A stretch of DNA of 64,000 bases from Callorhinchus milii. Its lineage: Eukaryota. Below, one piece after another: positions 3,301 to 63,611 of the stretch. The notes beneath the pieces were generated by a model. That model was not told where the DNA came from. It was given only the letters and a program-made list of their open reading frames with translations, and did no database searches. A program made the translations under genes and the position numbers. The stretch is taken from positions 12,214,001-12,278,000 of the forward strand of contig NW_024704745.1 of the NCBI RefSeq assembly GCF_018977255.1, given 5' to 3'. The first letter of the stretch is position 1; each line of letters opens with the position of its first letter.

Positions 3301-6300
3301 GGTTTGGTGAGTTGTAGTGTGCAACCATGGAGGTTGATGCTGCCAGAGCCTGAGGTGCTGAGGCGCTGGCGCGAGCCAATCAGGAGGGCCTCAGTCTTGT
3401 TCACATTCAACTAGGAAATTTGCTCTCATCCAGAACTTGATGTCCAACAGGCAGTCGTGTGTCAGTGGTCCTGGAGTTGAGGGTGGAGGCAGAAAGATAG
3501 AGTTAGGTGTCATACATATGGAAGTTGACTCCATGTCTGCGGATGATGTCACCAAGGGGGAGCATGTAGATATTAAAGAGGAGAGGGCCAAGGACAGAGC
3601 CCTGGGGGATGCCAGACGTGACAGACGGGGGCTGGAGTAGAAACCATTAGAGGCAACAAAGTGGAGAGCGAGAGAGATAGGAATCGAACCAGGCAAGGGC
3701 GGGTCCGCAAAGATTAAGTAAAGAGGAGAGGCGGTGAATGAGGATAGAGCGATCGACAATGTTGAAGGCGGCAGAGAGGTCGAGAAGGACAAGGAGGCAG
3801 AGGGAGCCCTGATCACAGATGTTCAGAATGTCATTAGTGCCTTTGACCAGGGCCGTTTCCGTGCTGTGGGCACCGGATTGGAAGGGTAGGAACGATTCTT
3901 GGTATCAGTGACTTGAGAATAAACCCTTTATGGTGATAGTAAGAGAATGGTTTATCTTCTTTGTAGCTTAATGTTAATATTTGCAGATCCTGAAAATTGA
4001 ACTCAGGCTACTAACTTGCCACCTTGTTACCCGCTACATTATCTGCCGCTAACCCCCAAGAGTTCAGGTCTGGGTGGGGGGGAAGGACAGAGTTCCGAAA
4101 CTCAGTGGATAATGAGTTTGTCACATTTTGTCACCACTGATGTGGAAAATCACATTTTAGGCTCTGTTACAACCGCACCTAACAATTTATATCTGATGTT
4201 TTCAGTGTTTTGTTCTTATCAATAGTGTTTTTCATGAATTTCAGACTCTCGAGCAAACAGAAATGGAATCTGAGGGTATCAGCCTGTCCCTGGAGGAACA
4301 GATGAATGCAATGTCATTGACAGAGGTCACAACTTCCGAGCCCAAATCAATGGTCCTTTTGAATGGTACTAGCTTCGAAGCTGAACTTTTTGAACAAACC
4401 AGGGAGAGCACAAAGGTATGGAGTTCAGTTTTATTTTACACCAGAACCTCCATTGAAACAGCAGTTTGCATGTGTTCCTGGACCTGATAAGTAATCCTCA
4501 AATTGTAATTTGTACCACTTTTAATTTTGATAGCAACTTTGCTTAAATTTTTGTTGGACATGTAAAAGGTCAGTCTAAGAAGGCATTTAAATAAGGGGAA
4601 AAGTTACAATACGTACAAAAAATTGCAAAAATAAAGACCGATTTTATATGCAGGGAAATTTACTCTGAAATAGTTGTACAATTTGAGCATAAAATCTTAA
4701 AGGATACTTACAGATTGATTCAATCAATAAAATAAAACTATCAATTCCAGTTCAAGTTAATGGTACTAGATTCGAAGCTGAACTTTTTGAACAAACCAGT
4801 GAGAGAACAAAGGTATAGAGTTCAGATTTGTTTTACTGAACTCCATACTTTTGTGCTCCAATGTCCAAATGCAGAGTGCTAGTTGGAATAATTTTATTTG
4901 TGGTATTTGAAATAATTAAGTCTGTATTTGACCTTCTGTTCTGGCTGTTGACAGATCACCGCACTGTTGACAAAGCTAAAGGCAATCAGCAGCAGCCGAG
5001 AGCCACAGAAAAGGTAAATAGTCGAGACAACATCATGTTAGGTTTAAATACTCAGATGATTTCTAATACAATAAATGATATATGGATTCAGAATTTATAT
5101 ATTCCTCATCTGTCAGTGTGATTGTAGAGGTGTTGATCTGCAATCTGTAACTATATTGTATTGCCTTGTGCTGCCTGACTGAGCTTTGCCTCAGTCCCTT
5201 CATTATTGAGGCTTCTTTGTGTCCTAACAAGTTGAATGAGTCTGTACTTACCAATCTGTATGTTTTCCTTTCCCAGTGTGGTGGTCTCTCAATGGACCAG
5301 CATGCTGCGTGTAGTGGCAGAACACTTGGATCGGATCAAGCTGAGCTATGTAACCATAGATGGCTCTGTGACTCCTAAACGGCGCATGGATTTTGTGGAG
5401 GAATTCAACACTAACCCGAAAACTATTCAGGTGCAATACTGACCTTGTTTTTGTTCAGAAAAGTGTGAGGGGTTAGGCACGTTGAATGTACTAGGTTGGG
5501 CAATGGTTAATGTGAAGCAGAGAGTGGAAGGGCTCAACTGCTGTCGGTGATTCTTATTAAAAACGTATATTGTAGGTTCACAGTTAAATCAGTGTTGTTT
5601 ATGTGTCTGGTGCTTGGTTACATGGAGGAGAGGTGTCCTTTATTTATGTGGTACCAAGTAATAGGATGTTTTGAAGACTTGACCTGAAAGAGGCTCCATG
5701 ATGATCGCTTTGTCTCTCTTACTCCATAGGTCATGCTGGTCTCTCTGTGTGCTGGGGGTGTGGGTTTGAATTTGATTGGAGGAAACCACCTCTTCTTATT
5801 AGACATGCACTGGTAAGGTTAAAGATCAGCAAGAGCAATGATCATCATTATTGCAGACTGTTTTACAATCTGACATTGGAGAGAAGGACGCTAAATTGTG
5901 GATTGTTACATACTGCTATCTATAAATTGTTACCTTATTCAAATGGTTTAATTTCTAGGATTATTTGAGATGAACAAAATAATCCCACATCGTGTCATGT
6001 CACCTAATTATCTTTTCAGGAACCCAGCGCTGGAGGAGCAGGCCTCCGATCGAATTTACCGCGTAGGGCAACAAAAGAACGTCACCGTGCACAGGTACTA
6101 GATGAACAAATGAGAAAATATTTGATTAAAGGTGCTATAATTTTTCTCCTCATGGATTAACTTTGCAGACCAGAGATCAAACCATGCTTTCTTTTATTTC
6201 ATGAAACTATCAGTAACATCCTGGATAGCACATACACTTTATATTGTTGCACTACGCAGTTACTACTAATATCAAACCGTCGGGTTCACTTTTGTGTCTT

Positions 6301-6562
6301 GATCGAGTGAAACACCTAATGCAATAAAACCATGGAAAGTGGCAAAAGGTATTTTCCTATGAGTGTCTTTGCTCCCAATAAAAAATGGCCAATCATTTTA
6401 ATTTTCTTTCTCCCCAGGTTTGTGTGCGAGGGAACTGTCGAAGACAAAATTTTTGAACTGCAAGAGAAGAAAAAAGAACTGGCAAAGAAGGTGTTATCAG
6501 GGACTGGAGAATCCTTCACTAAGCTCACACTGGCGGACCTCCGGATTCTTTTTGGTGTCTGA
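307..6562 (+). CDS. TTF2: Transcription termination factor 2 (SNF2-family helicase), last 9 coding exons; 5' part lies outside the window
   Basis: Phase-consistent AG/GT exons: 307-398, 1286-1374, 2164-2306, 4245-4415, 4955-5013, 5277-5430, 5730-5812, 6020-6094, 6418-6562(stop). Translation has [21 protein letters not shown]...[46 protein letters not shown] and the C-terminus [13 protein letters not shown], matching remembered vertebrate TTF2. Adjacent to TRIM45 as in human. Confidence 0.95.
2577..3880 (-). mobile_element. L2-clade LINE, 5'-truncated (RT C-terminus plus 3' tail), in a TTF2 intron
   Basis: ORF 2808-3410 has [10 protein letters not shown]...LHWLPI...[11 protein letters not shown]; ends in the stem-loop tail plus (TTG)n. 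Boundaries approximate. Confidence 0.9.
4759..4825 (+). repeat. Intronic 67-bp duplicate of the 3' end and donor site of TTF2 exon 4245-4415
   Basis: 4759-4825 aligns gap-free with 4362-4428 with a handful of substitutions, including ACAAAG|GTAT. Confidence 0.85.
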
Positions 6563-8250
6563 GTTTTAGAGGAAGGATGTTCAGCAAATCTAATTGTTGA
6601 TCAACAGAGCACTCTTAACAGTTCTCATTAAAGAGAATCCTAGAGTCTGTCAATCTACAGAAAAGAGCCCAGTTGAAAATACTGGAAGTCCTGAACATTT
6701 TTTGCCAAATATATATACTGTAATAGTTAATTTGAAATCTTATGATCGCAACTTACAATAATTACATTGCTTTTTGACCTATTTCCATCTATCAAGAGTG
6801 CCTCACTTCCTTTCCCAGCGCTCAACTCAAACTCTTCTGGAGGCATGGGGAAGAGTACCACTTGGTTCATATACCTGATACAGTTAGATCATAAAGAGCC
6901 TGATGAGAGATTTCTTTTGACAAAAGTGCAACAATGCTTTCAAATGTCTTATCACAAAACCTAAAGGTTTCAATTTTATTTTAAAAACTTGATGTTTGCT
7001 ATTATCTGAAGGCAGGGGCCCAATGCATCACTAACAATAAATTATTTTAGTTAATGAACTATTAATGACTCTTTTCTGTAAACCATTTTGGACGAAATAG
7101 TTTGATTAGGCTTCTTTTATTTAGTTGCAGTTTGTTTAAGGTACAAGAAACACACAGAATTTTAGAAAAATCCAGAACGTTAATGTATTGAAGATGCGAG
7201 CATCAATGTGATGCATATAGAGAACAAGCTGCTTTGAAGGTATGAGACACTTTGGTTCTGGCCCTGAGGTTTAGTTGGACAATAGACCTTAAAGAATTAA
7301 AGAATAACAATAATTCTTGCATTTGATAGAAATGCTTAGAAATCATGTTGAACATCTATTTCATAATGCTTCACACCGTGAGCTACTCTAAAGTGTATTA
7401 ACATCTTTTGAAAGCAAATCTGGCATCTAATTTGTTCCACAGACAACAATGAAATGAATAACGTCATTATGTGGTTTTGGTGAATTTGGGTGAGTGATAA
7501 ATAATAATAATAATAGAAGACATGAAAAGTGCTATATCAAATGCAATGATTATTATAATAATCCTTACATTTGATATAGCGCCTTATCACGTCATGGAGA
7601 CGTCTCAAAGAGCTTCACAGGATACACTGTAACATATAGTGACTTTTGTGGGCGAAACAGATTGGACTAGGAGCATGTACTGCTCTTTGAAATAGGAGCA
7701 CATGGTCTTTAAAGTCCATCTTATCTGAACCATCAGATGATTTTAAAATCTTGGTGTAAAGTCTTCCAAAGGATAGCACATTCAACAATGTAGGGCTCCC
7801 TTTTGTGCTGTACTACAATGGAGTTTCAGCCTAGATTATGAGTTACTGTCCCGGCTTCAGGTTTTAAACCCCATCATTTTAATGAAAGGTAAGAGTACTA
7901 CCAGTTAAGCCAAACTGAACCCCATTTGGAGTCACATCAAGTAGAACAGTTCAACATTTTTTCCCTTTCGCGTGTTAGTATGTTTTCTTTCCCATCCTAA
8001 ATTTGGCTGTGCGTTAATCTCCATGAAGGGCCAGCCATGTTAATTACTTTCCCAGTCCCTGGACGCATCCCTGCTCTCAAACTACTACCCCATCTCCAAC
8101 CTCCCTTTTCTTTCCAGGGTCCTGGAATGAGTCGTTGCTTCTCAGTTTCGCTCCTTCCTCTCCTGCCTCTCCCTTCACGAACCCCTCCGATTGGGTTTCT
8201 CACCTCAACCTTCATGGTTGTGTCCTTGAATGGTTCAGATCCTAGCTGTA

Positions 8251-12188: not shown

Positions 12189-14348
12189 TTAATTGCTGCC
12201 ATTTGGGCATGTGAGTTTGGGCCAGATCTAAGAAGTAAAATAGAATCCATTTTAGCAATCATGTCAATGATTAGTACATAGAAACCTGCTGAATGTGTTC
12301 AGTCACTTACCATCCAACCACATATCACTGCCGTCAATAACATACTCATAAGCACAAAGTAGATGGTGAGGCGTATGATGAGAAGCACATAACTCTTAAC
12401 TAGGGTGAAATGTGAAACACATAGACAATTAGAAACCTGACCTGGCACAACAATCTTCGCAAATATTTAGTCTGCACATCATCCAATTGATCTATCTGTA
12501 CACATCAACACCTCCCCACAAAAACATGATTAGACACAGGAAAATAAAACACTGGACCCTGTGATCCAGGAATATGTTATCTACAGCATTCGCCCTTCAT
12601 TTCAAAAGGGTAAGGATTTAAGTTCTGGTCAGTTTGAACTGCCTATTTTTCTGCGATCTGGTAAAAAGTTTTACCAAATTCAAATATCGTGTCTTTTAAC
12701 GCGTTTTTGAAATGTGGTGGTGTTTCCAGCTGAGCTATCCACATACTTTATGAAACGCTTTATTAAAATTCGCTACCAATATTTGTGGTGAGTTGAAACA
12801 CGATATGTCACCTGCTTTGTATCGCATTGGACTTCATTGTATGAGAGAGAGAGAGCTGATAAATATGTATTTATATAAATAGACATTTAGGACAGCAGAT
12901 TTGGTCCATTGTAGAACCATGAACATACATTATGTCAGCTTCCTTCATAGTCATAGCAATTCGGGACAGAATGGAGCACAGTAGAATGCAATCCCTTTAA
13001 TGTAAAGCGAAATGACTTACCGGGGGGGAAGCTGATCCTCTCTGTACCTGGTGGGATGAGGGTGATGTGCTGAATCTGACAGGTGACAGCAGAGCCCAGG
13101 TGCCAGTCAGGGATTTGGAGGCTCAGCCGTGAGCTCATGGTGAAGGTCCCGTCGCTGTTCACTGTGAGAGATGCGGACTCTGTCTCATGCGGTACATCTC
13201 CCGCTACCATCCAGGAAACATTCAGATCTCTTGGGAAAAATCCCGCAGCCACACAGGTCAGAGTCTGAATTCCAGAGGTCCCATTCTCTGGATCAGCTGA
13301 GACACTGATTTGGGGTTTCGCTAAATAAATCATACATTGGAAATCAATCGCCCAACTGCCTGTTGAAAGTTTATATTTGCGCAAATGTGAGATGGAATGA
13401 AGAAAAAAAATGCAGAATCAATAAACCTCCAAAGCACAAACAAATACTAACTGATGTTATGTTTTTTTTGAAAGAAAAGCTAAAGCTTGTTTGTGTTCCA
13501 TTTTTTCACCCACGTCTACAAAGAAATTGAAATAAAACAAGAATTCATTCCTGCAAAAAAAAAAAAAATCCTCAATGTAGAGTTTTGTGCAGTTTTTCGT
13601 GTTTCTCGCATCCTATTCTGGTGCCAGACTTCTGCAGTTTTACATTTTGTCTATTTTTCCGCTGTCTGCAAACACATTTTACCAAATATAAGCATTGGCT
13701 CTTTAATGGTTATTGTTAGTAAAACTTGGTGGTCTCAATAGCTAACAAATAACATATCTATCTACAAGCATTGGTCCTTGGCTTATAATTACCTTGGATC
13801 CTCAGGCCTGTTCCATTCCCGGTGAAGTTTCTACGGGGCGAAGGTTCCTCTACAAGGATCCAGCAGTAATATGTGTCTGAATCATTCACTATCACCTCGC
13901 TAAACACAAGCGAACTCTCAGATTTAGATATACGAGAGGGTTCATCGATGAAAGTTGGCAATCTATTATTCTGAACAGCAATATTGTCTCTTGTTCTATA
14001 CCAATAGTATCTGACAAATGTCAGCTCCTCTCTGGATTCCACAGTGCAGTTGAGCTGAGCTGGCTGCCCCCTGAGAAGGGTCAATGAGGGGACCTGAAGC
14101 ACTTTGACACCGACAGCACTCCCTGTAAATCAAAATAACAATGCAGAAATAATAATCCTTGCATTTGATATAGGCAATATCACGCCTGAGATGTCTCAAT
14201 AAACATCTAAAATAAACGTCAAGATTAACCTGTAATCATTCAATTGGTCTGAGTGGGGAAAAAAATTACAACAAATTTGGAGTGAACGTTGTTGCTTACC
14301 TTGGCTTAAGAAACAGAAAATAAAAACCATCTTACTAAAGTCACGCAT
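12189..14348 (-). CDS. NKp30/NCR3-like non-rearranging antigen-receptor-like gene, copy A1: leader, V with germline J-like motif, C1, TM with Arg, short tail; apparently intact
   Basis: Minus-strand exons, all AG/GT and phase-compatible. Leader 14348-14300 (MRDFSKMVFIFCFLSQ). V 14122-13793 (LNC, YYWYR, DSDTYYC, FTGNGTGLRIQ). C1 13320-13021 (LTCVAAGFFPRDLNVSW, NSDGTF, WHLGSAVTCQIQH). TM 12399-12311 (VKSYVLLIIRLTIYFVLMSMLLTAVICGWM). Probable last exon 12227-12189 (IWPKLTCPNGSN*), less certain. Confidence 0.85.
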
Positions 14349-17239: not shown

Positions 17240-17560
17240 GAGTCCTGCAGCTCAGTGGTTAGAGCACTCGCTTTGCAAGTGAGAGTCCTGAGTTCAATTC
17301 CAGGCAGAGGGCGATACCTTGGGCAAGTTTCCTTACTCCACACAGAGCCTAATAATAATCCCTCCAAAACCCAAAACAATAGTAAATTGGTCATTTTCAA
17401 TCTACGACTGTTTGTGGGACATTGCTGTGTGCAATTGGCCGCCGCGTTCGCCCACAAATATACAGTCAATTCACTTTACAGTGTGTTCTGTGAAGCGCTT
17501 TGGGACGTCCTCCCGACGTGAAAAGCGCTATATCAAATGCAAGGATTATTATTATTATTA
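17240..17560 (+). mobile_element. tRNA-derived SINE, short (young) subfamily, full length
   Basis: A/B-box head, conserved core, L2-type stem-loop tail, (ATT)n. Confidence 0.9.
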
Positions 17561-19213: not shown

Positions 19214-19242
19214 AGTGGCATTGTGAGGTGGAGGTTTCCAAA

Positions 19243-22200
19243 ATGTCAGGAACTGAGGACAAGTCACAAACTGCCTCTGGTAAGACATTTCCACTCTCTT
19301 CCAATGTTGAAGAAGCTTCAGGCAGCTGTGGGACCAAGTGTTCAGTTTGTAATCATCTCTACAGAGATCCGAGGATCTTACCCTGTCTTCACACACTGTG
19401 CCTGGAGTGTGTCAGGGGCTTGAAGCAGTTCTCTATTCCCAGGGCTCAGAGGGAGGATGATCGTGGACCTGGTGTCTCAGTGGACCATTGTGGACCTGAA
19501 GCTGTCATCCTGTGCCCAGTCTGTGATTGTGAAGTGGATTTACCAGTTGCTGGAGTGGAAGCATTGACCAGCAACCAGTTGATTCTCAATGAGGTCTTAC
19601 TGGAACGCATACAGAGAGCTGATTCTGGGCTGGTCTGTGATCTGTGTAATGATGGGGATGCTGAAAGAAGATGTGACATGTGTTGTGTAAATCTCTGTGA
19701 CTTCTGTTCCAAAGCACACAGGTAAGGTACTGTTTGGAAGGGGCATCAGATTGCATTTCCCCTTTTTTTTTGCAACTGCAAAGTAAATTAAGTCGTGACG
19801 GGCAGTGAAACACGATGATTGGACTAATACTTTTAGCCTGTCTTTATACTTTTGCTCAATAACTTTCTCTAATTGGTTTTTATGGTGTTTGTTTGATTTA
19901 CACACAGATTAATGATTGTAGTGTAGTATACGTATTAGGAAAGTGATCTCATCCATGTTGTCATCACCTGTGCTGCTGGTACTGCACATCTTTAGGTTCA
20001 GAGGCTGGATGAAGGGTCAAGGTCCATTAACACAACAACCAGCAATATAGAAAGCAGAAACTCAGTGAGTGAAGTAGTTGGTTTTTGTCACGTTTGGAAT
20101 TTAGTAATCTGTAAATTATATAAAAAAGTGAAAGGTGAGGGAGCTGAGAGGCATTTCACAGTGGTGAAGTTGAATAAATTTGAGACGAGACAGTGAATTA
20201 AGTTTTGATTTCAACAACATGACCATGGAGAGCGCGGGAGAGGGAACGGCCAATAATAGTCAGGCTGACATACCTTGTGCACCACTTTGAAATCAGCACT
20301 ACTATGGTCAACTTTGCGATTTTATTGTTAATATTCTCATTATGTTATAGTTTAAAGGAGATTGATATTTTGTTCACCGAGTATTTTGTCAAGCCATTTT
20401 TGAATAGTCTTAATCCCAATTGCACTGATGACTATAGGAACTATGTTTGTTTTACATTGCCACATAAGTGCACATTCAATTTATAGATTGATATGTTTCC
20501 TGATTTTCTCTAGTTCCTTGCATTTTGCATTATCACTTGGGATAGCCAAATCGATAGTACTACATAACATAACATGTAGGAGCAGGAGTAGGTCATTGGG
20601 CCCTTCAAGCCTGCCCCGCTATTCAATCATGGCTGATCTTCTAATCTAACTCCAGCTAATAACCTGACCCTGCCTTATCCCCATATCCCTTAATTCCTTT
20701 TGCAATAAGAAATCTTATCTATCTCAGTCTTGGATTTGTTCAAGGACTAAGCATCAACAGCCCTTTGGGGCAGTGAGTTCCATACATTCACCGCCCTTTG
20801 AGTGAAGAAGTTCTTCCTCAACTCAGTGCGAAAGTGCTGGCCTCTGATTTTAAGGTTGTGACCTCTGGTTTTAGTTTCTCCAACCAGGGGAAACAATCTC
20901 CCACTATCTACTCTATCACACCCTTTGATGATCTTATAGGTTTCTATAAGATCCCCTCTAATTCTTCTATATTCTAGAGAATATAGGACCAAGTTGGTCA
21001 GCCTATCCTCGCAACTCAACCCCTTCGTCCTTGGTACTAACCTAGTAAATCTACGCTGCACCCCCTCCAAAGCAAGTACGTCCTTCCTTAAATGAGGAGA
21101 CCAAAACTGGACACAGTATTCCAGGTGTGGTCTCACCAGGGCCCTATACAGTTGCAGCAAGACTTCCCTACTCTTATACTCTAATCCTTTCATAATGAAT
21201 GCTAACATACCGTTCGCCTTCCTAATTCCTTGCTGCACCTGCAGACTAACTTTCTGTGATTGGTGTACAAGGACACCCAAGTCCCTCTGGACGCTAACAC
21301 ATTCGCTAACTACATGTACAATCTATTTGATTTTTTTTATGATAGTGTATGATCTGTTCTAGCAGATTGTCCTGTTCTGTAATCTGAATCCCAGATTATT
21401 GTGATGTTGTTTCTCGATGTAACTTTTGCTAGTTGATGTTTACAAATTGTCCAGTGAATATTATTATTATGTTGTTGTGAGGGTCAGCCAGAACAAAAAT
21501 ACTGCCATGTTACACTTGAATAACTGTTACTTTTCTTAGTAATTGAACTTTCTGCAGGAAGTGCACATTTTGTGCACTGGGTATCTGTCAAGCTATTTCT
21601 GAATTGTCTTATTAACGGTCCCAGTTGCACCAATAATTATAGGAACTATGCTTGTCTTGTACTGCCATGATTATGAATATATTAACCTTTTCTTGTTATG
21701 TATTCCTCCTCCAGAAGGCAGAGAAAAACTGCTTCCCATGTTACAGTGGCCCTGAGGGATCTGAAATGTGGCAAGGGAAGGATTTCTAAGCCCGTGCTTT
21801 GCCCATTTCACCCAGCAGAGGAACTACGGCTGTTTTGCGAGACGTGCGATCGTCTGGTGTGCCGGGATTGTTGTATGGTGGAACATCGTGACCACCGCTG
21901 TGATTTCATTGCTAACGTTATCAACAAGCATGGCGATTTTATTCGAGAGTTGCTCAAACAAACACAACCGCACGTCAGGCAACTGCAGGAGACGTTACGT
22001 GACATCGGCAGAGCCAAGCTGCAAGTGCGAGAGCGGACCAAAGTAATAGCCGAAGAAATTAAAACGTTCACAGAGTATTACATCAAGGCTTTGGAGGCGC
22101 ATCAAGGTAGACTTTTGAAAGAGTTGGAAGAGCTGAAAATTCACAAGGAGAATTCCCTGCATTTGCAGCAGATCCAGTTGGAGCAGATGTTCTCGGATGT

Positions 22201-25200
22201 GAAGACTGGTGTGGATTTCACAGAGCACCTGCTGACCAGTGGCTCCCACGTGGAGATCCTACTGACCAAGCATGTGGTGGTGAAACGGCTGAAGCAGCTA
22301 CACCAGATCAGTTACAGTACTCGCCCAGGAGAGGACGATGCAATACGATTCGAACCTCAGGAGAGGGCAGCACAGTGCAACGGGCTTGAAGTGTTTGGAG
22401 TTATTGTCACAAAGGCAGTTGATCCAAACAAGTGTGTTCTTCAGGGGGAAGGTGAGCTAAAAAGACCAGAATGAGTCTTCAAGTGCAGAATAGTTTGATA
22501 ACGTGCTGAGAAGGTCTCTAAGCTCTTTCAAAGTTAGCTAGAAAGTGTAATGACTGTGTATTTGTAGGCAGATATGGGAGCCGATTTGTGCACAGCAATG
22601 TCCCACAAACAACCATGAGGTGAAAAATACATTTATCTGGAGCATTGTTGGCCAGGGCACTGGGAGCAACTCCCTTCTCTTTTCAAAGAGTGCCAAGGGA
22701 TCTTTAAAGTCCATCTGGTTTAATATACATTGGAATATACAGCACAGAAACGGGTCGTTCGGCCCAACTGGTCTATGCCGGTGTTTATGCTCCACATGAG
22801 CCTCCTCCTGCCCTTCCTCAACTAAGCCTTCAAGCATAACCTTCTATTCCTTTCTCCCTCATGTACCTATACAGCTTTCTCTTAATTACATCTATGCTAT
22901 TTGCCTCAACAATTCCTTGTAGCATGTTCCACATTCCCACACTTGTTTTGAAGAAATTTCTTCTAACTTCCCTATTTGATCTATTTGTGACTATTTTATA
23001 TTGATAGCCCCGGGGTTTGGTATCCCTCACAAGTGGGAGCATCTTCCCTATGTCTACCCTATCAAAACCTTTCATCATTTTAAAGACCTCTATCAGGTCA
23101 CCCCTTACCCTCTTTTCAAGAGTCCAAGTATGTTCAGCCTTTCCTGATAGGTATAACTTCTCAGTTCTGGGATCATCCTTGCAAATCTCCTTTGCACCCT
23201 CTCCAGTACCTCTACAACCCTTCTATAATGTGGGGACCAGAACTGCACACAATATCCTAAGTGTGGTCTAACCGAGGTTCTATAGAGGTTTATTGTAACT
23301 TCCCTGGTTTTCATTTCTATCCCTCCAGAAATGAGCCCCAATAATAATAATAATCCTTGCATTTGATATAGCGTTTTTCACGTCGGGAGGACGTCCCAAA
23401 GCGCTTCACAGAACACACTGTAAAGTGAATTGACTGTATATTTGTAGCGAACCCGGCAGCCAATTGCGCACAGCAATGTCCCACGAACAGTCGTAGATTG
23501 AAAATGACCAATTTATTATTGTTTTTGGTTTTGGAGGGATTATTATTAGGCTCTGTGTGGAGTAAGGAAACTTGCCCAAGGTTTCGCCCTCTGCCTGGAA
23601 TTGAACTCAGGTCTCTCGCTTGTAAAGTGAGTGCTCTAACCACTGAGCTACAGGACTCCACAAATATCTGGTTTGCTTTTTTTATGGCCTTATTAAGCTG
23701 CGTTGCTACTTTTAGTGAATTGTGTATGTGTACCCCTAGATCCCTTTGCTCCTCATTTAGGTTTTTATTTTCCAGGATGTATGTGACTTCCGTATTCCTT
23801 CTACCAAAATGTAACTTCACACTTTTCTACATGGAAATGCATTTGCCATTTAAATGCCCACTCAGCAAGTTTATTAATGTCTTGCTGTAATTTGTTGCAT
23901 TCCTCCTCTGGTATTAACTATTCCACCCAATTTGGTGTCATCCGCAAATTTTGAAATTGTACTGCTGATTCCCGAATCCAAATCATTAATGTATATTATG
24001 AACAACAGTGGTCCCAATACCGATCCTTGTACCCTACCCTTTACCCCTGCTCTCTGTTTTCAGTTTTGCAGCCAGTTTCCTATCCATTCTGTTATTTTTC
24101 CACATGCTCTTTCCTTAACAGCGCCTTGGGATGCCCTCCCGACATGAAAGGCGCTATACAAATGTAATCTTGTTGTTGTTGTATTCATTAGTCTATTTTG
24201 TGGTTCCTTATTGAGCCTTATACTTAGCTGGAAATTCATCTCGTGGTGTAAAATTATACTTCTTTATGCTGTATTCTTTTCAGCTAGGGAAAATTGATAT
24301 ACTAAAACACCGGCTAGCCGGACAAGACAGCCCAGCAAGAATATTACTGCTCAGATTGTTGTTTACATTCCAACCTTCATCTGTTGCCTGTGAATTATTA
24401 ACCTGGCCGAACAACAACAAAATTGCAATTATATTGTGTCTTTCATGTCCCAAGGCATGAGACAATGAGGGTTTTGCACCCAAGCTATAGGTTGGGATCA
24501 GAGAAGGGTGGAGGGCATGGAGTGGAAGAGGGAAGATGACCAAAGGCATGGTTGAAACGGAATATCTTTAGATGGGCCTTGAAGGAGGGACTCTGAGACA
24601 CAATTCCAGAGGCTGGGGGCAGAAAGACTGAAGGCCTGACCCTAAAAAAATGTTAAACAAGACACCAAGGTTCGTACTGGTTCAGCAAGGCGGAGAATGC
24701 ATTCATGAACAGTTATGTTGTCAGCGCCTGAGGTGGGGAGATGCTGATGGGAGCCAAGCAAGAGAGCATCAGTCTTTTTGATGTCAGCCGAGAGTGACCA
24801 CTATGGTTTTACTTCACACTTATGTCAAACTGCCTGGTTTTATTTCTCACACTAGTGACAGACTGGATGAATAAAGTGGTCAACAGTGTCAAAGGCAACA
24901 GAGCGATAAAGAAGGACAAGGAAACAGAGAGAGCCCCAGTCATAGATAGACAGAATGTCATTTGTAACTGACTAAGGCTGTCTCCGAGACACCGTCTGGC
25001 GTGAAGGGTGCTATATAAATACTCGTTGTTCTTGTGTCTGTTCTATGGGCAGAAACCAGATTAGAGAGGTTCAAACAGGAAGTGGTGGGAGAGGAAAGAG
25101 AGAAGCTGAGAAGCAACAACTCGTTCGTAGATCTTGGAAAGGAAAGGTTGGAGATCGGTCAGTAGTTTGAGAAGAGAGACTTGTCTTCTGTCTTTAAGGA

Positions 25201-28200: not shown

Positions 28201-28912
28201 GGGGCACAATGTTAGGTGAGCAGAACAGAAGGATTTATTTTGTTAGAAACTCAACAACAACTTGCATTTATGGAGCTCCCTTCAAGCGAGGTACTGTCCC
28301 GGAGCGCTTGACAGTCGTGGAGTCTGACCCTGAGCCAGGGGGAGAGGGAGGGGGGAGGTGACCGTAACCACATTCAAAAAAGGTAGATGAGCATAATAAT
28401 AATAACCCTTGCATTTGATATAGCGCTTTTCAAGTCTTCTAGACGTCTCAAAGCGCTTCACAGAATATACTGTAAAGTGAATTGACTGTACATTTGTGGG
28501 CGAACTCGGCAGCCAATTGCGCACAGCAGTGTCCCACAAACAGGCGTAGATTGAAAATGACCAATTTATTATTGTTTTGTTTTGGAGGGATTATTATTAG
28601 GCTCTATGTGGAGGAAGGAAACTTGCCCAAGGTTTCGCCCTCTGCCTGGAATTGAACTCGGGTCTCTCGCTTGCAAAGCGAGTGCTCTAACCACTGAGCT
28701 ACAGGACTCCAATGCTTCATCTCTAGCACACTGTGAAATTCTCTCTTATTTTTTTATTGTCAGGTGGGTATCAAGGCTGCGGACATGGTCACAAAGGTCA
28801 CCCTGGACGGCCACACTGGTCCTGCTGCGGGAAGCTGTCTGAAAATTCAGAATGTGCTGGACCCGTAAATGGCAGTTTATACCGTAGCCTGGTCACGACT
28901 GTGGCTCTCTAA
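19243..28912 (+). CDS. TRIM45: Tripartite motif-containing 45 (RING, 2 B-boxes, coiled coil, filamin domain), 6 coding exons
   Basis: Exons 19243-19721, 21715-22451, 25798-25927, 26935-27049, 28089-28215, 28764-28912(TAA), all phase-consistent. RING CSVC...CLHTLCLEC, B-box CPFHPAEELRLFCETC, filamin DNHDGTYCITYTP, C-terminus GCGHGHKGHPGRPHWSCCG...TVAL* match remembered TRIM45. Confidence 0.95.
20570..21300 (-). mobile_element. CR1-clade LINE 3' fragment in TRIM45 intron 1
   Basis: ORF 20747-21280 [20 protein letters not shown]...GVQRRFTRL, plus CR1-type tail. Confidence 0.9.
22725..24030 (-). mobile_element. CR1-clade LINE fragment split by a SINE
   Basis: [28 protein letters not shown]; SINE inserted at 23340-23659. 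Confidence 0.85.
23340..23659 (-). mobile_element. tRNA-derived SINE, short subfamily
   Basis: Full reverse-complement copy. Confidence 0.9.
24480..25480 (-). mobile_element. Degraded L2 fragments
   Basis: Purine-rich + strand with antisense L2 motifs (ggaaaggaaaggttggagat, ggaggtggagctggga). Boundaries approximate. Confidence 0.6.
28393..28710 (-). mobile_element. tRNA-derived SINE in the last TRIM45 intron
   Basis: Full reverse-complement copy with an intermediate-type tail. Confidence 0.9.
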
Positions 28913-43222: not shown

Positions 43223-45441
43223 TCGGGGTGAAGCTGATCCTCTCTGTACCCGGTGGGATGAGGGTGATGTGCTGAACCTGACAGGTGACAGCAGAGCCCA
43301 GGTGCCAGTCAGGGGTTTGGAGGCTCAGCCGTGAGCTCAGGGTGAAGGTCCCGTCGCTGTTCACTGTGAGAGATGCGGACTCTGTCTCATGCGGTACATC
43401 TCCCGTTACCATCCAGGAAACATTCAGATCTCTTGGGAGAAATCCCGCAGCCACACAGGTCAGAGTCTGAATTCCAGAGGTCCCACTCTCTGGTTCAGCT
43501 GAGAGCTGGACTTGGGGTTTGACTGTAAGATAAATAATTATCTTAAGATACATAATTAACATTGGACGCAAAAAGGACAGTGTTTATAACTACCTGCACT
43601 TATCAAGCAGTGACACTGGCCCATTTCAATCCCTAATTTCCACACACCTACTTGCATCGAAAGCCAGATTGCAAAGGCAGTGAGTGGTTGGTTCCAACAC
43701 TTGTTAAAAAAAAAAATTGCGTTAAAAAAATGGCGCACGAAAGAGACCCCAGAAATCTCAACATCAACCGAACCAACACTCCCGCTCCAGCACATGCAGC
43801 GCCACTTGAGAGGAACGAGTGAACCACAGTAACAGCACTGAATCTGTGACTGATATATGTGTGCCTTTGCCATACCCCACCAGCATCGGTAACTGTTGTT
43901 GGCATTGCCGAGGCAATGTGCCACACGGCTGGACCTGGGCGTAAAGGAGGCTCACATTTGATGCCACTTTGTGTCTTTGAACATGTGCCCCCCCCGCCAC
44001 TCCCTCCCTCCCTGGATAAAGATCCCAGCCCGAGGCTAATTTCCTCCCTCACTAAATAGTAAAATACCCTCTTATTCCTAATGCGGCTCCAGCAAACTCT
44101 GCACAGACCAGGGATCATAGCTGGAAGATATTAGGTTTCATTTAAACAGATAGACAAGATACTGTGCCTCGGAATGTCAAACTGGTTTCATTCCCTGTGA
44201 ATTCTCTTCTGAGCAGAGGGTCCTCCACTACAATCAGTAGTTATTGGCGGTAGTTATAATACTCGCCGATGTCAATCGCAGCAATGACATCGATCACAAG
44301 CAGGCTGAAAGGCAAGTTTAAGCCTTTAGACACGGCTGTACGATGGTTAGACTGAATTGCTTTCATGCCTTGTGTCGGATTGCGGCTTCGGTCTCTTCGA
44401 TACCAGTAATAAATGAAGTATTTGATCTCTCCCCTGGTATGCGCAGAGCAGTTGAACCGAGCTGTGTCTCCAGGTTTCAGTGACAGAGGACGGAGACTGG
44501 TGGACTTGAAGACTGGTAATCACAGCTGTAAATGAGAGACTTGGTGTAGCCGTTACATTTGCGGTTACATACTATATTGCATAGTATTATGGTTAAGCCC
44601 TAAACCTATTCCAGTTATTAAAATTACTGCTATAATCTAATATCTCCATGTGGTGAGAGAGTTGCCATCGCACGATACGTCTTTAAACGAGCATTGAAGG
44701 ATTCTCAAAGAAATCAGCAATTGATGATTTTTACTTTGCAAACTTATATAAAATTAGCTATTGCATTTGTGTCTGTTATGCATCGATTGGTCGAAGTGTG
44801 TTACAGTAAGTTGAATTTTCATTTCATGCTCGATAAAAGTTCTTAGCGCAACCTTCCAAAAATGTCCAAAACAACAATCCATAAATGCTCATAACATCAC
44901 AGACGTTAGTCAAAATGAATTGATCCATAAAGGGCTGAAATACTCTAGATTGTGGAACCATGTTTAACAGCAAAAAAAGCTGATTTATTGGATCGAATGT
45001 CATCAAATGCAGATAAGAAAAACAACGTGGCAGAAAACTCTATAGTGATGTATCCAAAGGTAGAACGGGTCTTAAGATTATCAGATCTGTAGGTTTGAAA
45101 TCCAGAGGAAACATATTTCTAAACGGACGCCTTATTAGATAACTAATAATTGTATCAATCATTTAAAAAAAGAATGCAAATGAAATCATAGAAATGGACA
45201 ATAAAATGAACCGGATAAACGACTATACAAAAAGGTACTTTATAGATGGCATCTGGAATTTCTATGTATAAGTGGGATGGCATGGAATTCTCAGTTTGGT
45301 TTGGCTATCCTTAAGCATGGTAATGGGTTTCCACATGTGTTAGACATCTGCTTGATCAAATAAAAATAGAGATAACGTCTAAACTTACGCAGACTTACCT
45401 GAGCTGCATAAAATAAGAAGCACTTCTCGCCAGTCAGCCAT
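43223..45441 (-). pseudogene. NKp30-like V(J)-C1 receptor pseudogene, copy A2: intact leader and C1, disrupted divergent V
   Basis: Leader 45441-45399 (MADWREVLLILCSS, G|GTAAGT). V 44525-44168 (358 nt, not a multiple of 3): frameshift before LKPGDTARFNC, then YYWYR, an in-frame TAA, no second Cys, EFTGNETSL and a GC donor. C1 43522-43223 is open and about 96% identical to the A1 C1 after its first 22 nt. No TM exon identified. Confidence 0.8.
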
Positions 45442-56860: not shown

Positions 56861-57193
56861 TAATAATAATAATAATAATAATAATCCTTGCATTTGATAT
56901 AGCGCTTTTCACGTCAGGAGGACGTCCCAAAGCGCTTTACAGCACACACTGTAAAGTGAATTGACTGTATATTTGTGGGCAAACGCGGCAGCCAATTGCG
57001 CACAGCAATGTCCCACAAACAGTCGTAGATTGAAAATGACCAATTTAATTATTGTTTTTGGTTTTTTGGAGGGATTATTATTAGGCTCTGTGTGGAGTAA
57101 GGAAACTTGCCCAAGGTTTCGCCCTCTGCCTGGAATTGAACTCAGGTCTCTCACTTGCAAAGCGAGTGCTCTAACCACTGAGCTACAGGACTC
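56861..57193 (-). mobile_element. tRNA-derived SINE, short subfamily
   Basis: Full reverse-complement copy. Confidence 0.9.
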
Positions 57194-61270: not shown

Positions 61271-62769
61271 ATGTTTCACAATTTCTGGTTCTTCGTCCTA
61301 GGTAAGCATCAACGTTCACTCCAAACCGTTAACATTTATTATAACAAGACTCGGACCATTTTTGATTAAATACAGGTTACCTTTGTTATTTCTGCATTGT
61401 TATTTTGATTTACAGGGAGTGCTGTCGGTGTCAAAGTGCTTCAGGTCCCCTCATTGACCCTTCTCAGGGGGCAGCCAGCTCAGCTCAACTGCACTGTGGA
61501 ATCCAGAGAGGAGCTGACATTTGTCAGATACTATTGGTATAGAACAAGAGACAATATTGCTGTTCAGAATAATAGATTTCCAACGTTCATCGATGAAACC
61601 TCTCGTATATCTAAATCTGGGAGTTCGCTTGTGTTTAGCGAGGTGATAGTGAATGATTCAGACACATATTACTGCTGGATACTTGTAGAGGAACCTTTGC
61701 CCCGTAGAAACTTCACCGGGAATGGAACAGACCTGAGGATCCAAGGTAATTATAATAATAATAATCCTTGCATTTGATATAGTGCTTTTCATGTCTTCTC
61801 GACATCTCAAAGCGCTTCACAGAATATATTGTAAAGTGAATTGACCGTATATTTGTGGGCGAAATTCACACTGACCAGAGCTGAAATCCTTGTATATTTG
61901 AAGCCAAGGACCAACGCTTGTAGATAGATATGTTATTTGTTAGCTATTGAGACCACCAAGTTTTACTAACAATAACCATTAAAGAGCCAATGCTTATATT
62001 TGGTAAAACGTGTTTGCAGACAGCGGAAAAATAGACAAAATGTAAAACTGCAGAAGTTCTGGCACCAGAATAGGAGGCGAGAAACACGAAAAACTGCACA
62101 AAACTCAACAGTGAGGATTTTGTGTTGTGGTTTTTTTTTGCAGGAACGAATCCTTGTTTTATTTCAATTTCTTTGTAGACGTGGGTGCAAAGATGGAACA
62201 CAGACGAGCTTTAGCTTTTCTTTCAAAATATAAAAAAAAGACATAACATCAGTTAGTATTTGTTTGTGCTTTTTGGAGGTTTCTGGATTCTGCATTTTTT
62301 TTCTTCTTCATTCCATCTCTCACATTTGCGCAAATATAAACTTTCAACGCGCAGTTGGTGCGCGAATGATTTCCAAATGTATGATTTATTTTAAGCGAAA
62401 CCCCAAATCAGTGTCTCAGCTGATCCGGAGAGTGGGACCTCTGGAGTTCAGACTCTGACCTGTGTGGCTGCGGGATTTTTCCCGAGAGATCTGAATGTTT
62501 CCTGGACGGTTGCGGGAGATGTACCGCACGAGACAGAGTCCGCATCTCTCACAGTGAACGACGACGGGACCTTCACTCTGAGCTCACGGCTGAGCCTCCA
62601 AACCCCTGACTGGCGCCTGGGCTCTGCTGTCACCTGTCAGGTTCAGCACATCACCCTCATCCCACCGGGTACAGAGAGGATCAGCTTCACTGCGGGTGAG
62701 TCACGTTTCGCTTTGCGTCAAAAAGGGATCGCGTTCTATCGGGTGCGACTGGAAACGATAGTCACATAA
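61271..62769 (+). CDS. NKp30-like V(J)-C1 gene, copy A3 (inverted paralogue of A1): intact leader-V-C1; membrane exon not identified, read-through stop at 62767-62769
   Basis: Leader 61271-61301 (MFHNFWFFVL), V 61416-61745, C1 62396-62695, canonical splice sites, no stops. V differs from A1 at 7/330 nt and C1 at 19/300 nt (manual count). Confidence 0.8.
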
Positions 62770-62903: not shown

Positions 62904-62942
62904 CCCCCGACTTTATGTTCACGGTTTTGCAGTGGAGCTGTT

Positions 62943-62982
<40 letters not shown>

Positions 62983-63116: not shown

Positions 63117-63178
<62 letters not shown>

Positions 63179-63572: not shown

Positions 63573-63611
<39 letters not shown>

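What the first reader, a model, noticed from the sequence alone, without database searches (positions are those of the whole stretch)
12189..14348. Gene A1 has TCR-chain architecture fixed in the germline: L-VJ-C1-TM(Arg)-short tail
Seen: the V exon ends RNFTGNGTGLRIQ, a J-like GxGTxL motif resembling human NKp30 TGNGTRL. A canonical C1-set exon follows, then a TM exon missed by the ORF track (12399-12311) reading VLLIIRLTIYF, like NKp30 VLLLRAGFY, and a tail with no Tyr motif. Established: mammalian NKp30 has no C1 domain, and a TM Arg recruits CD3zeta/FcRgamma. Inference: an activating, adaptor-coupled innate receptor intermediate between NKp30 and a TCR chain.
Basis: partly seen in the sequence, partly recalled or inferred. 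Interest (0 to 1): 0.85.

Follow-up and report, generated by a model that had tools for sequence, protein, structure and literature searches.

The report
Activating partner of shark SIRP-like receptors
An intact but unannotated elephant-shark gene encodes a cell-surface receptor with a V-J domain, a C1 domain, a membrane arginine and a short tail. It is best read as the activating twin of a SIRP-like inhibitory receptor family found in sharks, rays and chimaeras, not as a link between NKp30 and T-cell receptors.

Summary
On the minus strand, five exons with canonical AG/GT sites and matching phases give a 268-aa protein: leader, germline-joined VJ domain, C1-set domain, a transmembrane segment with Arg236, and a 12-residue tail without tyrosine.

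A1 belongs to a multigene family found in chimaera, sharks and rays, with looser homologues in paddlefish and amphibians. NCBI auto-names its members "SIRP beta-1-like" or "SIRP alpha-like". Most members are inhibitory, with a long tail carrying four collinear ITIM/ITSM-like tyrosine motifs. Rays and the chimaera also have V-C1-TM(Arg)-short-tail forms.

The window holds a second copy (A2) whose V domain is 95% identical to A1's, and a decayed copy. A1 lies tail-to-tail with a TTF2-like helicase gene, as the ray activating genes do. It also lies next to TRIM45-like and B7-H3/H4-like genes, which matches human 1p13.1.

No test showed specific NKp30 kinship. TCR hallmarks (rearrangement, a stalk cysteine) are absent.

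Most likely A1 is an adaptor-coupled activating counterpart in a paired-receptor system. Expression and adaptor binding are untested.

The parts
14300..14348 (-). A1 exon 1: start codon and leader (MRDFSKMVFIFCFLSQ + 1 nt), phase-1 donor GTAAGC
   Evidence: Same length and position as the leader of the shark homologues. 81% nt identity to the A2 leader region.
13793..14122 (-). A1 exon 2: germline-joined VJ domain (V-set) ending FTGNGTGLRIQ
   Evidence: Pfam V-set E=4.7e-9. J-like G-x-G-T conserved in 12 family members. 97.9% nt identity to the A2 V exon and its flanks.
13021..13320 (-). A1 exon 3: C1-set domain
   Evidence: Pfam C1-set E=9.5e-17. Matches to Ig, SIRP and UrIg2 C1 domains.
12311..12399 (-). 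A1 exon 4: short stalk and transmembrane helix with Arg236 (VKSYVLLIIRLTIYFVLMSMLLTAVICGWM)
   Evidence: Hydropathy maximum at residues 230-250, and the only non-repeat TM-like exon candidate in the window. AF2 helix at 228-261 with block pLDDT 76-92 across 231-260.
12189..12227 (-). A1 exon 5: 12-residue cytoplasmic tail IWPKLTCPNGSN and the stop codon (12191-12189)
   Evidence: No tyrosine. The nearest poly(A)-like signal is ATTAAA at 11493.
61271..62695 (+). A2, the paralogue. Leader 61271-61301, VJ exon 61416-61745, C1 exon 62396-62695. TM and tail exons were not found in the remaining 1.3 kb of the window. Closest to the inhibitory long-tail protein P0001.
   Evidence: V is 95% aa identical to A1. 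94-96% identical to P0001. Homology with A1 stops about 40 bp past the C1 donor.
43223..44525 (-). Decayed family copy. The V exon (44525-44168) has in-frame stops, has lost the second Cys and has a GC donor. The C1 exon (43522-43223) is intact.
6416..6565 (+). Last coding exon of a TTF2-like (GRF zinc finger + SNF2) helicase gene, tail-to-tail with A1. Positional anchor.
   Evidence: tblastx gives 48/50 identical residues to the helicase gene that abuts the Mobula activating gene. Pfam content of that gene.

Best explanation
A1 is the activating member of a paired-receptor family of germline-joined VJ-C1 immunoglobulin-superfamily receptors. The family occurs in chimaeras, sharks and rays. 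Its closest well-studied counterpart is the SIRP family.

Shown:
- The gene is intact and encodes leader, VJ, C1, TM(Arg236) and a 12-aa tail.
- Its ectodomain is nearly identical to that of a neighbouring paralogue, A2.
- Family members elsewhere carry an uncharged TM and a long tail with four ITIM/ITSM-like tyrosine motifs.
- Rays have the same V-C1-TM(Arg)-short-tail form at the same genomic position, abutting TTF2.

Inferred:
- A1 and the inhibitory members see the same or similar ligand through the V domain.
- The inhibitory members recruit SHP-type phosphatases.
- A1 has no signalling motif of its own. It would pair its membrane arginine with the membrane aspartate of an ITAM adaptor dimer and deliver an activating signal. 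The adaptor would be FcR-gamma/CD3-zeta-like given the outer-leaflet position of the Arg, or possibly DAP12-like.
- The ectodomains are kept alike by recent duplication or gene conversion, while the membrane and tail exons differ.
For: - Gene model. Domains.
- Non-random TM exon. AF2 places a confident helix at 228-261.
- Family and names: searches give 20 proteins from 11 chondrichthyan species, auto-named SIRP beta-1-like, SIRP alpha-like and similar.
- Activating-type members in rays (P0009, P0017) have a TM Arg and a short tail.
- Inhibitory tails carry four collinear motifs (LHYASV, TEYAVL, VxYSTV, TIYASL). These are collinear with those of the caecilian homologue (the frog and paddlefish tails align at three and two of the four) and with my remembered human SIRP-alpha tail.
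- A1 and A2 are homologous from the leader to about 40 bp past the C1 exon, and unrelated after that.
- dN/dS for V+C1 is 0.49.
- Position: the window holds the TTF2-like last exon 5.6 kb from the A1 stop, tail-to-tail. This is the arrangement at the Mobula and Hemitrygon activating genes.
- TM similarity of A1 to the ray activating TM is z=2.3 with the Arg aligned. To the chimaera inhibitory TM it is z=2.8, with a shared C-x-W-[IM]-I end.
- SIRP-alpha d1-d2 is the best contiguous V-C1 match in the PDB (50.3 bits, i-Evalue 2.5e-12).
- The V-C1 tree joins the family, its bony-vertebrate homologues and SIRP-alpha (support 92/92), apart from UrIg2 and Ig lambda.
- Recurrent birth of activating receptors from inhibitory ones is established for KIR and Ly49 (PMC2213150, title and abstract seen).
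Against: - There is no transcript evidence. The exact 268-aa product is absent from a 15-billion-protein collection, and the only public models of this locus are mis-spliced fragments (P0004).
- Adaptor binding is untested.
- Mammalian SIRP-beta uses Lys and DAP12, whereas A1 has Arg.
- A1 has one C1 domain and SIRPs have two.
- SIRP kinship is not robust. Human SIRP-alpha sits on a very long branch and is basal in the V-only tree.
- The locus corresponds to human 1p13.1, not to the SIRP cluster, which I recall at 20p13.
- dN/dS of 0.74 in the V exon rests on only 7 differences, so constraint on A1 itself is not demonstrated.
Confidence: 0.6

Rival explanations
1. One reading: A1 is an evolutionary intermediate between NKp30 (NCR3) and a TCR chain. 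On this view it is an NKp30-type V domain that has kept a C1 domain and couples to CD3-zeta/FcR-gamma through an NKp30-like TM arginine.
For: - The J-like TGNGTxL motif with an N-glycosylation sequon is shared with NKp30.
- hhalign of the family V profile against human NKp30 gives 94% probability, E 1.3e-7 and 28% identity.
- The TM Arg sits at a similar depth, with R-x-x-hydrophobic-Y in both.
- B7-family genes lie in the same window, recalling the NKp30-B7H6 pairing.
- A joint A-family + NKp30 clade is not rejected (AU p=0.14).
Against: - BLASTP of the A1 V domain against NKp30 finds nothing.
- SIRP-alpha D1 scores the same as NKp30 in hhalign, so the match reflects the V-set fold.
- NKp30 is absent from the top 60 PDB hits of the V profile, which are VNAR, TCR V-alpha/delta and IgL.
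- None of the 19 nearest out-of-family V hits I looked up is named NCR3. Several are SIRP-like.
- The V tree puts NKp30 outside the A-family clade.
- TM similarity to NKp30 is at chance level (z 0.9-1.3).
- The neighbouring B7 gene is nearest to B7-H3/B7-H4, and B7-H6 is not among its PDB hits.
- TCR features are absent: no split V exon and no stalk cysteine.
Confidence: 0.1
2. A1 is a young duplicate that lost the inhibitory membrane and tail exons and does not function as a receptor. It would be unexpressed, or expressed only as a secreted or read-through product, and the 12.3-kb exon would not be used.
For: - There is no transcript or correct gene model in public protein sets. The public model reads through the C1 donor (P0004).
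- A sister copy in the same window is clearly decaying.
- V-exon dN/dS is 0.74 on 7 changes.
- The only poly(A)-like signals downstream are ATTAAA, about 700 nt away.
Against: - All five exons are open, with consensus splice sites and correct phases.
- The TM exon has a perfect GTAAGT donor and is the only such candidate in 128 kb scanned.
- V+C1 dN/dS is 0.49.
- The same architecture at the same position next to TTF2 is annotated in two ray species. That argues for long-term retention of an activating gene at this site.
Confidence: 0.15
3. A1 is one chain of a TCR-like heterodimer. It would pair through its V and C1 domains with a partner chain, and its TM arginine would assemble with CD3-type modules.
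For: - L-VJ-C1-TM(basic)-short tail is the outline of a TCR chain.
- The V profile's best PDB matches include TCR V-alpha and V-delta.
- Foldseek's best matches to the AF2 model are antibody light chains, which are V-C1.
Against: - There is no cysteine between the C1 domain and the membrane for an interchain disulfide. The cysteines are at 12, 42, 103, 149, 207, 253 and 263.
- No distinct partner-type gene is seen in the window. The other copies are the same type.
- The family has ITIM-tailed members, which fits paired innate receptors and not antigen-receptor chains.
- The AF2 model is of low confidence (mean pLDDT 64.7), so structure gives no support.
Confidence: 0.05

Closest known systems
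SIRP family (SIRP-alpha inhibitory, SIRP-beta activating); human structures 2wng and 4i2x
   Same: - N-terminal V domain with a J-like G strand, followed by a C1-set domain.
- Paired inhibitory members (four tyrosine motifs in the same order: ITIM-like, TEYA-type, ITIM-like, xxYAS[VL]) and activating members (basic TM residue, very short tail) with near-identical ectodomains.
- Best contiguous V-C1 match in the PDB.
- Grouped with the A family in the V-C1 tree.
- NCBI names the shark and ray orthologues SIRP-like.
   Different: - One C1 domain instead of two. Ray inhibitory forms have two, through a lineage-specific duplication.
- TM Arg instead of the Lys of SIRP-beta.
- The locus corresponds to human 1p13.1 (TTF2-TRIM45-VTCN1), not to the SIRP cluster.
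- In the V-only tree, SIRP-alpha does not group with the family.
- BLAST finds no significant tail similarity to my remembered human SIRP-alpha tail.
NKp30 / NCR3
   Same: - Non-rearranging VJ-type V domain with a G-N-G-T-x-L motif.
- TM Arg in the outer third of the membrane, and a short tail.
- B7-family genes are relevant as ligands for NKp30, and B7-family genes neighbour A1.
   Different: - NKp30 has no C1 domain.
- There is no BLAST-level V similarity.
- TM similarity is at chance level.
- Mammalian NCR3 is a single MHC gene, as stated in PMC12227049, whereas A1 lies at a 1p13.1-like locus.
- The shark NCR3 paper (Kinlein et al. 2021, PMC8273117) could not be read here.
UrIg and UrIg2, the non-rearranging VJ-C1 genes of elasmobranchs (PMC12227049; PDB 9dmx)
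   Same: - Single-exon VJ domain with a split leader, followed by C1-set domain(s).
- UrIg2 has a TM form.
- Highest summed score in the PDB search (1.4e-28).
- They lie in the MHC or an MHC-paralogous region, and A1 may lie in another.
   Different: - UrIg2 has 9-11 C domains and forms disulfide-linked dimers with an Fc-like part. A1 has one C1 and no stalk cysteine.
- The UrIg2 score is the sum of three C-domain matches. Its V-C1 stretch scores below SIRP-alpha (37 against 50 bits).
- The tree puts UrIg2 outside the A family + SIRP group.
TCR chains
   Same: Leader, V(J), C1-type constant domain, TM with a basic residue and a very short tail. The V profile matches TCR V-alpha and V-delta well.
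   Different: - No rearrangement: V and J are in one exon.
- No connecting-peptide cysteine.
- A single basic TM residue.
- The family has ITIM-bearing members.

Membership tests
SIRP family | N-terminal V-set domain with a J-like G strand, followed directly by a C1-set domain | tested here: met
   Pfam V-set and C1-set. J-like motif conserved. SIRP-alpha d1-d2 aligns over A1 residues 28-215 at i-Evalue 2.5e-12.
SIRP family | Three-domain ectodomain V-C1-C1 | tested here: not met
   A1 and the shark members have one C1. Only the ray inhibitory members (P0010, P0011) have two, as near-identical tandem copies.
SIRP family | Paired members: an inhibitory form with four cytoplasmic tyrosine motifs, and an activating form with a basic TM residue and a minimal tail | tested here: met
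   A1, P0009 and P0017 are the activating type.
SIRP family | Phylogenetic grouping with bona fide SIRPs | tested here: inconclusive
   The V-C1 tree groups them (92/92), but SIRP-alpha is a long branch of 2.98. The V-only tree does not group them.
SIRP family | Conserved synteny with the tetrapod SIRP locus | tested here: not met
   The window holds a TTF2-like last exon, a TRIM45-like gene and a B7-H3/H4-like gene. That is the human PTGFRN-CD101-TTF2-TRIM45-VTCN1 block on chromosome 1 (PMC11565109). The location of the human SIRP cluster (20p13) comes from my own knowledge.
SIRP family | CD47 binding; DAP12 coupling of the activating member through a TM Lys | not testable with these tools
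   The sequence shows Arg, not Lys, at the TM position. Binding needs experiments.
NKp30 / NCR3 | Ectodomain made of a single V domain plus stalk, with no C domain | tested here: not met
   A1 has a C1-set domain. The mammalian NCR3 proteins returned carry V-set or general Ig-domain Pfam hits and no C1-set hit.
NKp30 / NCR3 | V-domain sequence kinship with NKp30 | tested here: inconclusive
   BLASTP finds none. hhalign gives E 1.3e-7, against 3.4e-7 for SIRP-alpha. The tree places NKp30 outside, but AU p=0.14. Shark NCR3 sequences could not be obtained.
NKp30 / NCR3 | TM arginine for CD3-zeta/FcR-gamma coupling | tested here: met
   Arg236 is residue 8 of the hydrophobic segment. Overall TM similarity to NKp30 is not above shuffles.
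NKp30 / NCR3 | MHC linkage | tested here: not met
   The window shows TTF2-like, TRIM45-like and B7-H3/H4-like neighbours, with no MHC genes seen. Only 64 kb could be examined.
TCR chain | V exon separated from J (and D) segments by recombination signals, and assembled somatically | tested here: not met
   V and the J-like strand are contiguous in one 330-nt exon. Recombination signal sequences were not searched for.
TCR chain | Cysteine in the connecting peptide for the interchain disulfide | tested here: not met
   There is no Cys between Cys207 of C1 and the TM.
TCR chain | C1-type constant domain, TM with basic residue(s), very short tail | tested here: met
UrIg / UrIg2 | VJ exon followed by several C1-type domains that form Fc-like disulfide-linked dimers | tested here: not met
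   A1 has a single C1 and no hinge or stalk Cys. UrIg2 falls outside the A family + SIRP group. The family description is from PMC12227049.

The most novel reading that the evidence does not exclude
The A family may be a third surviving non-rearranging VJ-C1 'relic' of the antigen-receptor precursor, sitting on the chromosome-1-type MHC paralogon (TTF2-TRIM45-VTCN1, near NOTCH2 in human). It would be an ohnologue of the MHC-linked UrIg/NCR3 genes and of UrIg2 in the Ig/TCR complex.

On this reading the ancestral gene already had the membrane-bound, adaptor-coupled V-C1-TM(+) form now seen in A1. SIRPs, and perhaps NKp30 by loss of C1, descend from it. Its conserved linkage to B7-family genes in shark and chimaera would reflect a co-evolving receptor-ligand pair.
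Probability: 0.15. Interest if true: 0.75.

Novelty: new member of a known kind. Interest (0 to 1): 0.42.

Why it matters
C1-set domains and VJ-type V domains are the building blocks of antibodies, T-cell receptors and MHC molecules. Non-rearranging genes that join them are the main clues to how antigen receptors arose.

If the reading here holds, paired activating and inhibitory VJ-C1 receptors were already in place before chimaeras split from sharks and rays. The inhibitory members carry a SIRP-alpha-like four-tyrosine tail. The family sits at a conserved locus (TTF2-TRIM45-B7-H4 type) that I recall as part of an MHC paralogous region.

That would give comparative immunologists three things:
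- a dated, positionally anchored family to set beside UrIg, UrIg2, NKp30 and SIRP;
- a testable receptor-ligand candidate pair, the neighbouring B7-like genes;
- a correction to the elephant-shark annotation, which lacks this gene.

It does not change how innate paired receptors are understood to work.

Tried and rejected
- **Possible inhibitory-type TM remnant downstream of A1 (10367-10314, tblastn E 0.12).** The translation has Pro and Glu inside the segment and no splice donor. Rejected as chance.
- **Inhibitory tail exons in the window.** None found, even at E up to 50.
- **AlphaFold2 model from a 12-sequence alignment.** Mean pLDDT 64.7, with only C1 and the TM helix reasonably confident. 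Foldseek returned antibody light chains at TM-score about 0.3. This confirms a V-C1 two-domain layout and nothing finer.
- **Homologue search with human NKp30.** The 120 hits listed were mammalian NCR3 or unnamed, so shark NCR3 could not be compared directly.
- **Papers that would say whether shark NKp30 has a C1 domain.** PMC8273117, PMC3709836, PMC4594805 and PMC10530332 are not held.
- **Errors of mine, to be ignored.** In one search the pseudogene C1 rows were misregistered. In one search the row labelled SIRPB1 used a wrongly remembered sequence.
- **Orthology of the Heptranchias upstream B7-like gene with the window's B7 gene.** The fetched flank holds only its last exons, so this could not be checked.
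- **Context look-ups for paddlefish P0149 and stingray P0011.** No record was found.
- **TTF2 exon candidate at 2151-2408.** No Pfam hit. Left unassigned.
- **Literature search on ITAM adaptors in elephant shark.** Nothing specific was found.
Full report
**1. What is in the sequence**

The window is elephant shark (Callorhinchus milii). UniProt fragments from that species match it at 100% (P0004).

On the minus strand between 14348 and 12189, five exons join in frame with AG acceptors and GT donors throughout:
- Leader, 14348-14300, followed by a phase-1 intron.
- V exon, 14122-13793.
- C1 exon, 13320-13021.
- Exon 12399-12311, encoding VKSYVLLIIRLTIYFVLMSMLLTAVICGWM.
- Terminal exon 12227-12189, encoding IWPKLTCPNGSN followed by the stop codon.

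The product is 268 aa. Pfam finds C1-set (E 9.5e-17) and V-set (E 4.7e-9). The V exon ends FTGNGTGLRIQ, so V and a J-like strand are joined in the germline.

The hydropathy maximum covers residues 230-250, with Arg236 eight residues into the segment. The cysteines are the two Ig pairs (42/103 and 149/207), one in the leader, one at the inner end of the TM, and one in the tail. None lies in the stalk.

I scanned both strands of the window for open AG...GTRAGT segments that encode a 21-residue hydrophobic stretch. The scan returned only this exon and one microsatellite artefact. The TM exon is therefore not a chance ORF.

**2. A1 is one member of a family**

The window holds three more related pieces.

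*A2, plus strand.* Leader 61271-61301, VJ exon 61416-61745, C1 exon 62396-62695.
- Its V domain is 95% identical to A1's at the protein level.
- The two loci align from the leader (81%), through the V exon and flanks (97.9% over 373 bp), to intron 2 plus C1 (90.7% over 838 bp). Homology stops about 40 bp past the C1 donor.
- dN/dS over V+C1 is 0.49.

*A decayed copy, minus strand.* The V exon (44525-44168) has stop codons, a lost second cysteine and a GC donor. The C1 exon (43522-43223) is intact.

*A degenerate V exon* at 32356-32724, with an in-frame stop.

**3. Relatives elsewhere**

Word-seeded protein searches recovered 20 relatives, all from cartilaginous fishes: Callorhinchus, Heptranchias, Heterodontus, Stegostoma, Hemiscyllium, Scyliorhinus, Pristis, Mobula, Hypanus, Hemitrygon and Narcine.

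NCBI's automatic names are inconsistent: SIRP beta-1-like, tyrosine-protein phosphatase non-receptor type substrate 1-like (that is, SIRP-alpha-like), Ig kappa-like and TCR beta-like.

Their sequences fall into two kinds:
- **Inhibitory type.** Most shark members, and a Callorhinchus-like protein 92% identical to A1 over V-C1 (P0001), have an uncharged TM (GFSKYYYFSLLSLILIVPFCLWII) and a tail of about 140 residues. Ray inhibitory members carry a duplicated C1.
- **Activating type.** Two ray proteins (Mobula P0009, Hemitrygon P0017) are V-C1-TM(Arg)-short tail, like A1.

The long tails carry four collinear tyrosine motifs: LHYASV, TEYAVL, VxYSTV and TIYASL. The caecilian homologue aligns at all four, while the frog tail aligns at three and the paddlefish tail at two. 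The four motifs also parallel the four tyrosines of human SIRP-alpha as I remember that sequence (ITYADL, TEYASI, LTYADL, SEYASV). BLAST itself finds no significant similarity to the human tail.

This is the classic paired-receptor picture: near-identical ectodomains with opposite signalling ends.

**4. How far the family reaches**

I searched 1.84 billion representative proteins exhaustively with a V-domain profile. Only four representative clusters scored below 1e-30, all of them the chondrichthyan family. After that there is a gap.

The best single-domain outsiders are other non-rearranging VJ-C1 or VJ-VJ receptors:
- a second elephant-shark V-C1 gene, LOC103180135, and its elasmobranch orthologues;
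- a caecilian 'SIRP-alpha-like' protein;
- a paddlefish V-C1 protein whose TM (HYYYFLIVGLIVFVPVLIWIL) resembles the shark inhibitory TM;
- a frog protein with a TEYAAVKV tail motif;
- lizard 'SIRP beta-2' and bamboo-shark 'SIRP beta-1-like'.

None of the 19 I looked up is named NCR3.

The exact A1 protein is absent from a 15-billion-protein collection. The public models of the locus are mis-spliced fragments. The correct gene model therefore appears to be unannotated.

**5. NKp30, SIRP, TCR or UrIg?**

I checked my remembered human NKp30 ectodomain against PDB 3pv6 and it is identical.

*NKp30 tests.*
- BLASTP of the A1 V domain against it finds nothing.
- Profile-profile comparison gives E 1.3e-7 and 28% identity for NKp30, and E 3.4e-7 and 23% for SIRP-alpha D1. 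That does not discriminate between them.
- The V profile's best PDB hits are shark VNAR, TCR V-alpha/delta and Ig light chains. NKp30 is not in the top 60.
- In a V-only tree, A1 and its family form a clade with the paddlefish and amphibian homologues (86/95). Mammalian NKp30 falls outside. Forcing A family + NKp30 together costs 9.8 log-likelihood units, AU p=0.14, so it is not rejected.

*SIRP tests.*
- With the whole protein, the best contiguous V-C1 match in the PDB is SIRP-alpha (50.3 bits, residues 28-215), then SIRP-gamma. UrIg2 tops the list only by summing three C-domain matches.
- A V-C1 tree groups the A family, the bony-vertebrate homologues and SIRP-alpha d1-d2 (92/92), apart from LOC103180135, UrIg2 and Ig lambda. 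SIRP-alpha is a very long branch in that tree.

*TCR tests.* The defining features are absent. The V exon is not split, and I did not look for recombination signals. There is no connecting-peptide cysteine.

*Conclusion.* A1 works like, and is most economically filed beside, the SIRP family. Strict membership is unproven: it has one C1 instead of two, Arg instead of Lys, a different locus and unstable tree placement. Specific NKp30 kinship has no positive support.

**6. Genomic position**

Window 6416-6565 (plus strand) encodes [48 protein letters not shown] followed by a stop. This is 48/50 identical to the last exon of the GRF-zinc-finger/SNF2 helicase gene that abuts the Mobula activating gene tail-to-tail. 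The Hemitrygon activating gene has the same neighbour. That domain architecture is TTF2's (my knowledge).

The window also holds:
- A TRIM gene (RING, B-box, coiled coil; 19228-19725 and 21698-22474). Per residue, its strongest PDB match is the TRIM45 coiled-coil (E 5e-16 against an 85-residue chain), although TRIM3 has the lowest E-value overall.
- B7-family exons: V at 53212-53589, butyrophilin-type IgC at 55152-55535, and another V at 39778-40191. The 53-kb V is nearest to CD276/B7-H3 and VTCN1/B7-H4. B7-H6 is not among its hits.

In Heptranchias, a V + IgC B7-like gene lies 8 kb upstream of the inhibitory family member.

In human, PTGFRN-CD101-TTF2-TRIM45-VTCN1 lie within 200 kb on chromosome 1 (PMC11565109).

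The family therefore sits in a conserved TTF2-TRIM45-B7 neighbourhood. The gene abutting TTF2 is the activating form in both chimaera and rays. A1's TM is weakly similar to the ray activating TM with the Arg aligned (z 2.3), and to the chimaera inhibitory TM (z 2.8, shared C-x-W-[IM]-I end).

I read this as positional orthology of an old activating gene whose ectodomain has been homogenised with its inhibitory neighbours. An independent origin of the Arg-bearing TM in each lineage is not excluded.

**7. Mechanism**

*Shown:* the architecture, the family, the pairing, and the position.

*Inferred from established receptor biology:* a TM arginine in the outer third of the helix, with a signalling-inert tail, marks receptors that need an ITAM adaptor dimer for surface expression and signalling. 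FcR-gamma and CD3-zeta serve NKp30, NKp46 and Fc-alpha-RI. DAP12 usually pairs with a mid-membrane lysine. ITIM/ITSM tails recruit SHP-1/2.

A1 would therefore convert recognition of the ligand seen by the inhibitory members into activation. Such activating members may arise as a counter-measure to pathogens that exploit the inhibitory receptor, as argued for KIR and Ly49 (PMC2213150).

*Not shown:* expression, adaptor identity, ligand and oligomeric state. The AF2 model (mean pLDDT 64.7) supports only the C1 fold and a TM helix at 228-261.

**8. Novelty and verdict**

The kind of system is well known: paired Ig-superfamily receptors, an activating member with a charged TM, and non-rearranging VJ-C1 genes. 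Orthologues in sharks and rays are already in RefSeq under SIRP-like names.

What is new here:
- the correct, unannotated elephant-shark gene;
- the recognition that activating and inhibitory forms coexist in holocephalans as well as batoids;
- the anchoring of the family to the TTF2-TRIM45-B7-H4-type locus.

The most novel reading still open is that this is a third non-rearranging VJ-C1 relic on the chromosome-1-type MHC paralogon, related by genome duplication to UrIg/NCR3 (MHC) and UrIg2 (the Ig/TCR complex), in the framework of PMC12227049 and PMC10751288. I give that about 0.15.

Overall interest is moderate. This is a solid, well-formed gene in an evolutionarily informative family, not the NKp30-TCR intermediate that was proposed.

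Noticed in passing
window 6416-6565 (+): Last coding exon of a TTF2-like GRF/SNF2 helicase. It is 96% identical at the protein level to the Mobula orthologue. An ORF at 2151-2408 (+) containing [14 protein letters not shown] may be another exon, but it has no Pfam hit.
   Followed up: partly
window 19228-19725 and 21698-22474 (+): TRIM gene exons: RING, B-box, coiled coil, and what looks to me like the start of a filamin-type repeat (not confirmed by Pfam). TRIM3 has the lowest E-value in the PDB, but the TRIM45 coiled-coil is the strongest match per residue. With TTF2 and a B7-H4-like gene, this matches the human 1p13.1 gene block.
   Followed up: partly
window 53212-53589 and 55152-55535 (+); 39778-40191 (-): B7-family exons interspersed with the receptor genes: V domains and a butyrophilin-type IgC domain. 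The 53-kb V is nearest to CD276/B7-H3 and VTCN1/B7-H4, not B7-H6. A B7-like gene also lies 8 kb upstream of the Heptranchias family member. These may be ligand candidates.
   Followed up: partly
window 32356-32724 (+): Isolated V-type exon with a J-like ...SRGTRLFVTG end and a GT donor. It carries one in-frame stop and is only 28-34% identical to the A family. Its second half shows weak similarity to NKp30 (31% over 36 aa). Probably a pseudo-exon of another VJ-type receptor.
   Followed up: partly
window 44525-43223 (-): Family pseudogene. The V exon is disabled (stops, YYC cysteine lost, GC donor) while the C1 exon stays open and 83-95% identical to the other copies. UniProt models A0A4W3GFJ5 and A0A4W3GW69 are built on it.
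   Followed up: yes
L001 (Mobula hypostoma) 10001-33649: The ray activating locus is complex. It has two C1 exons, a second V exon, and two copies of the Arg-bearing TM exon (about 21962-22066 and 29422-29607) before the terminal exon that abuts TTF2. This points to local tandem duplication.
   Followed up: no
window 62770-63160 and 63560-63600: Long microsatellite tracts begin right after the point where A1/A2 homology ends, downstream of the A2 C1 exon: (AAAAT/AAAATC)n, (GTT)n and (CT)n.
   Followed up: no
window 2808-3410 (-), 47002-48039 (-), 20747-21280 (-); 17255-17521, 23498-23890, 28582-28842, 56909-57178: ORFs that look like retroelement reverse-transcriptase fragments, and many copies of a repeat I take to be a SINE (translating as ...PGIELRSLACKASALTTELQ...). 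They fill the space between genes. One such insertion distinguishes A2 intron 2 from A1 intron 2. None of these was checked with a tool.
   Followed up: no
Callorhinchus milii LOC103180135 (P0089, not in the window): A second, cDNA-supported elephant-shark V-C1-TM gene with orthologues in Pristis, Amblyraja and Pristiophorus. Its tail ends in an IYxLLGQ motif. It is the nearest out-of-family V relative and seems uncharacterised.
   Followed up: no
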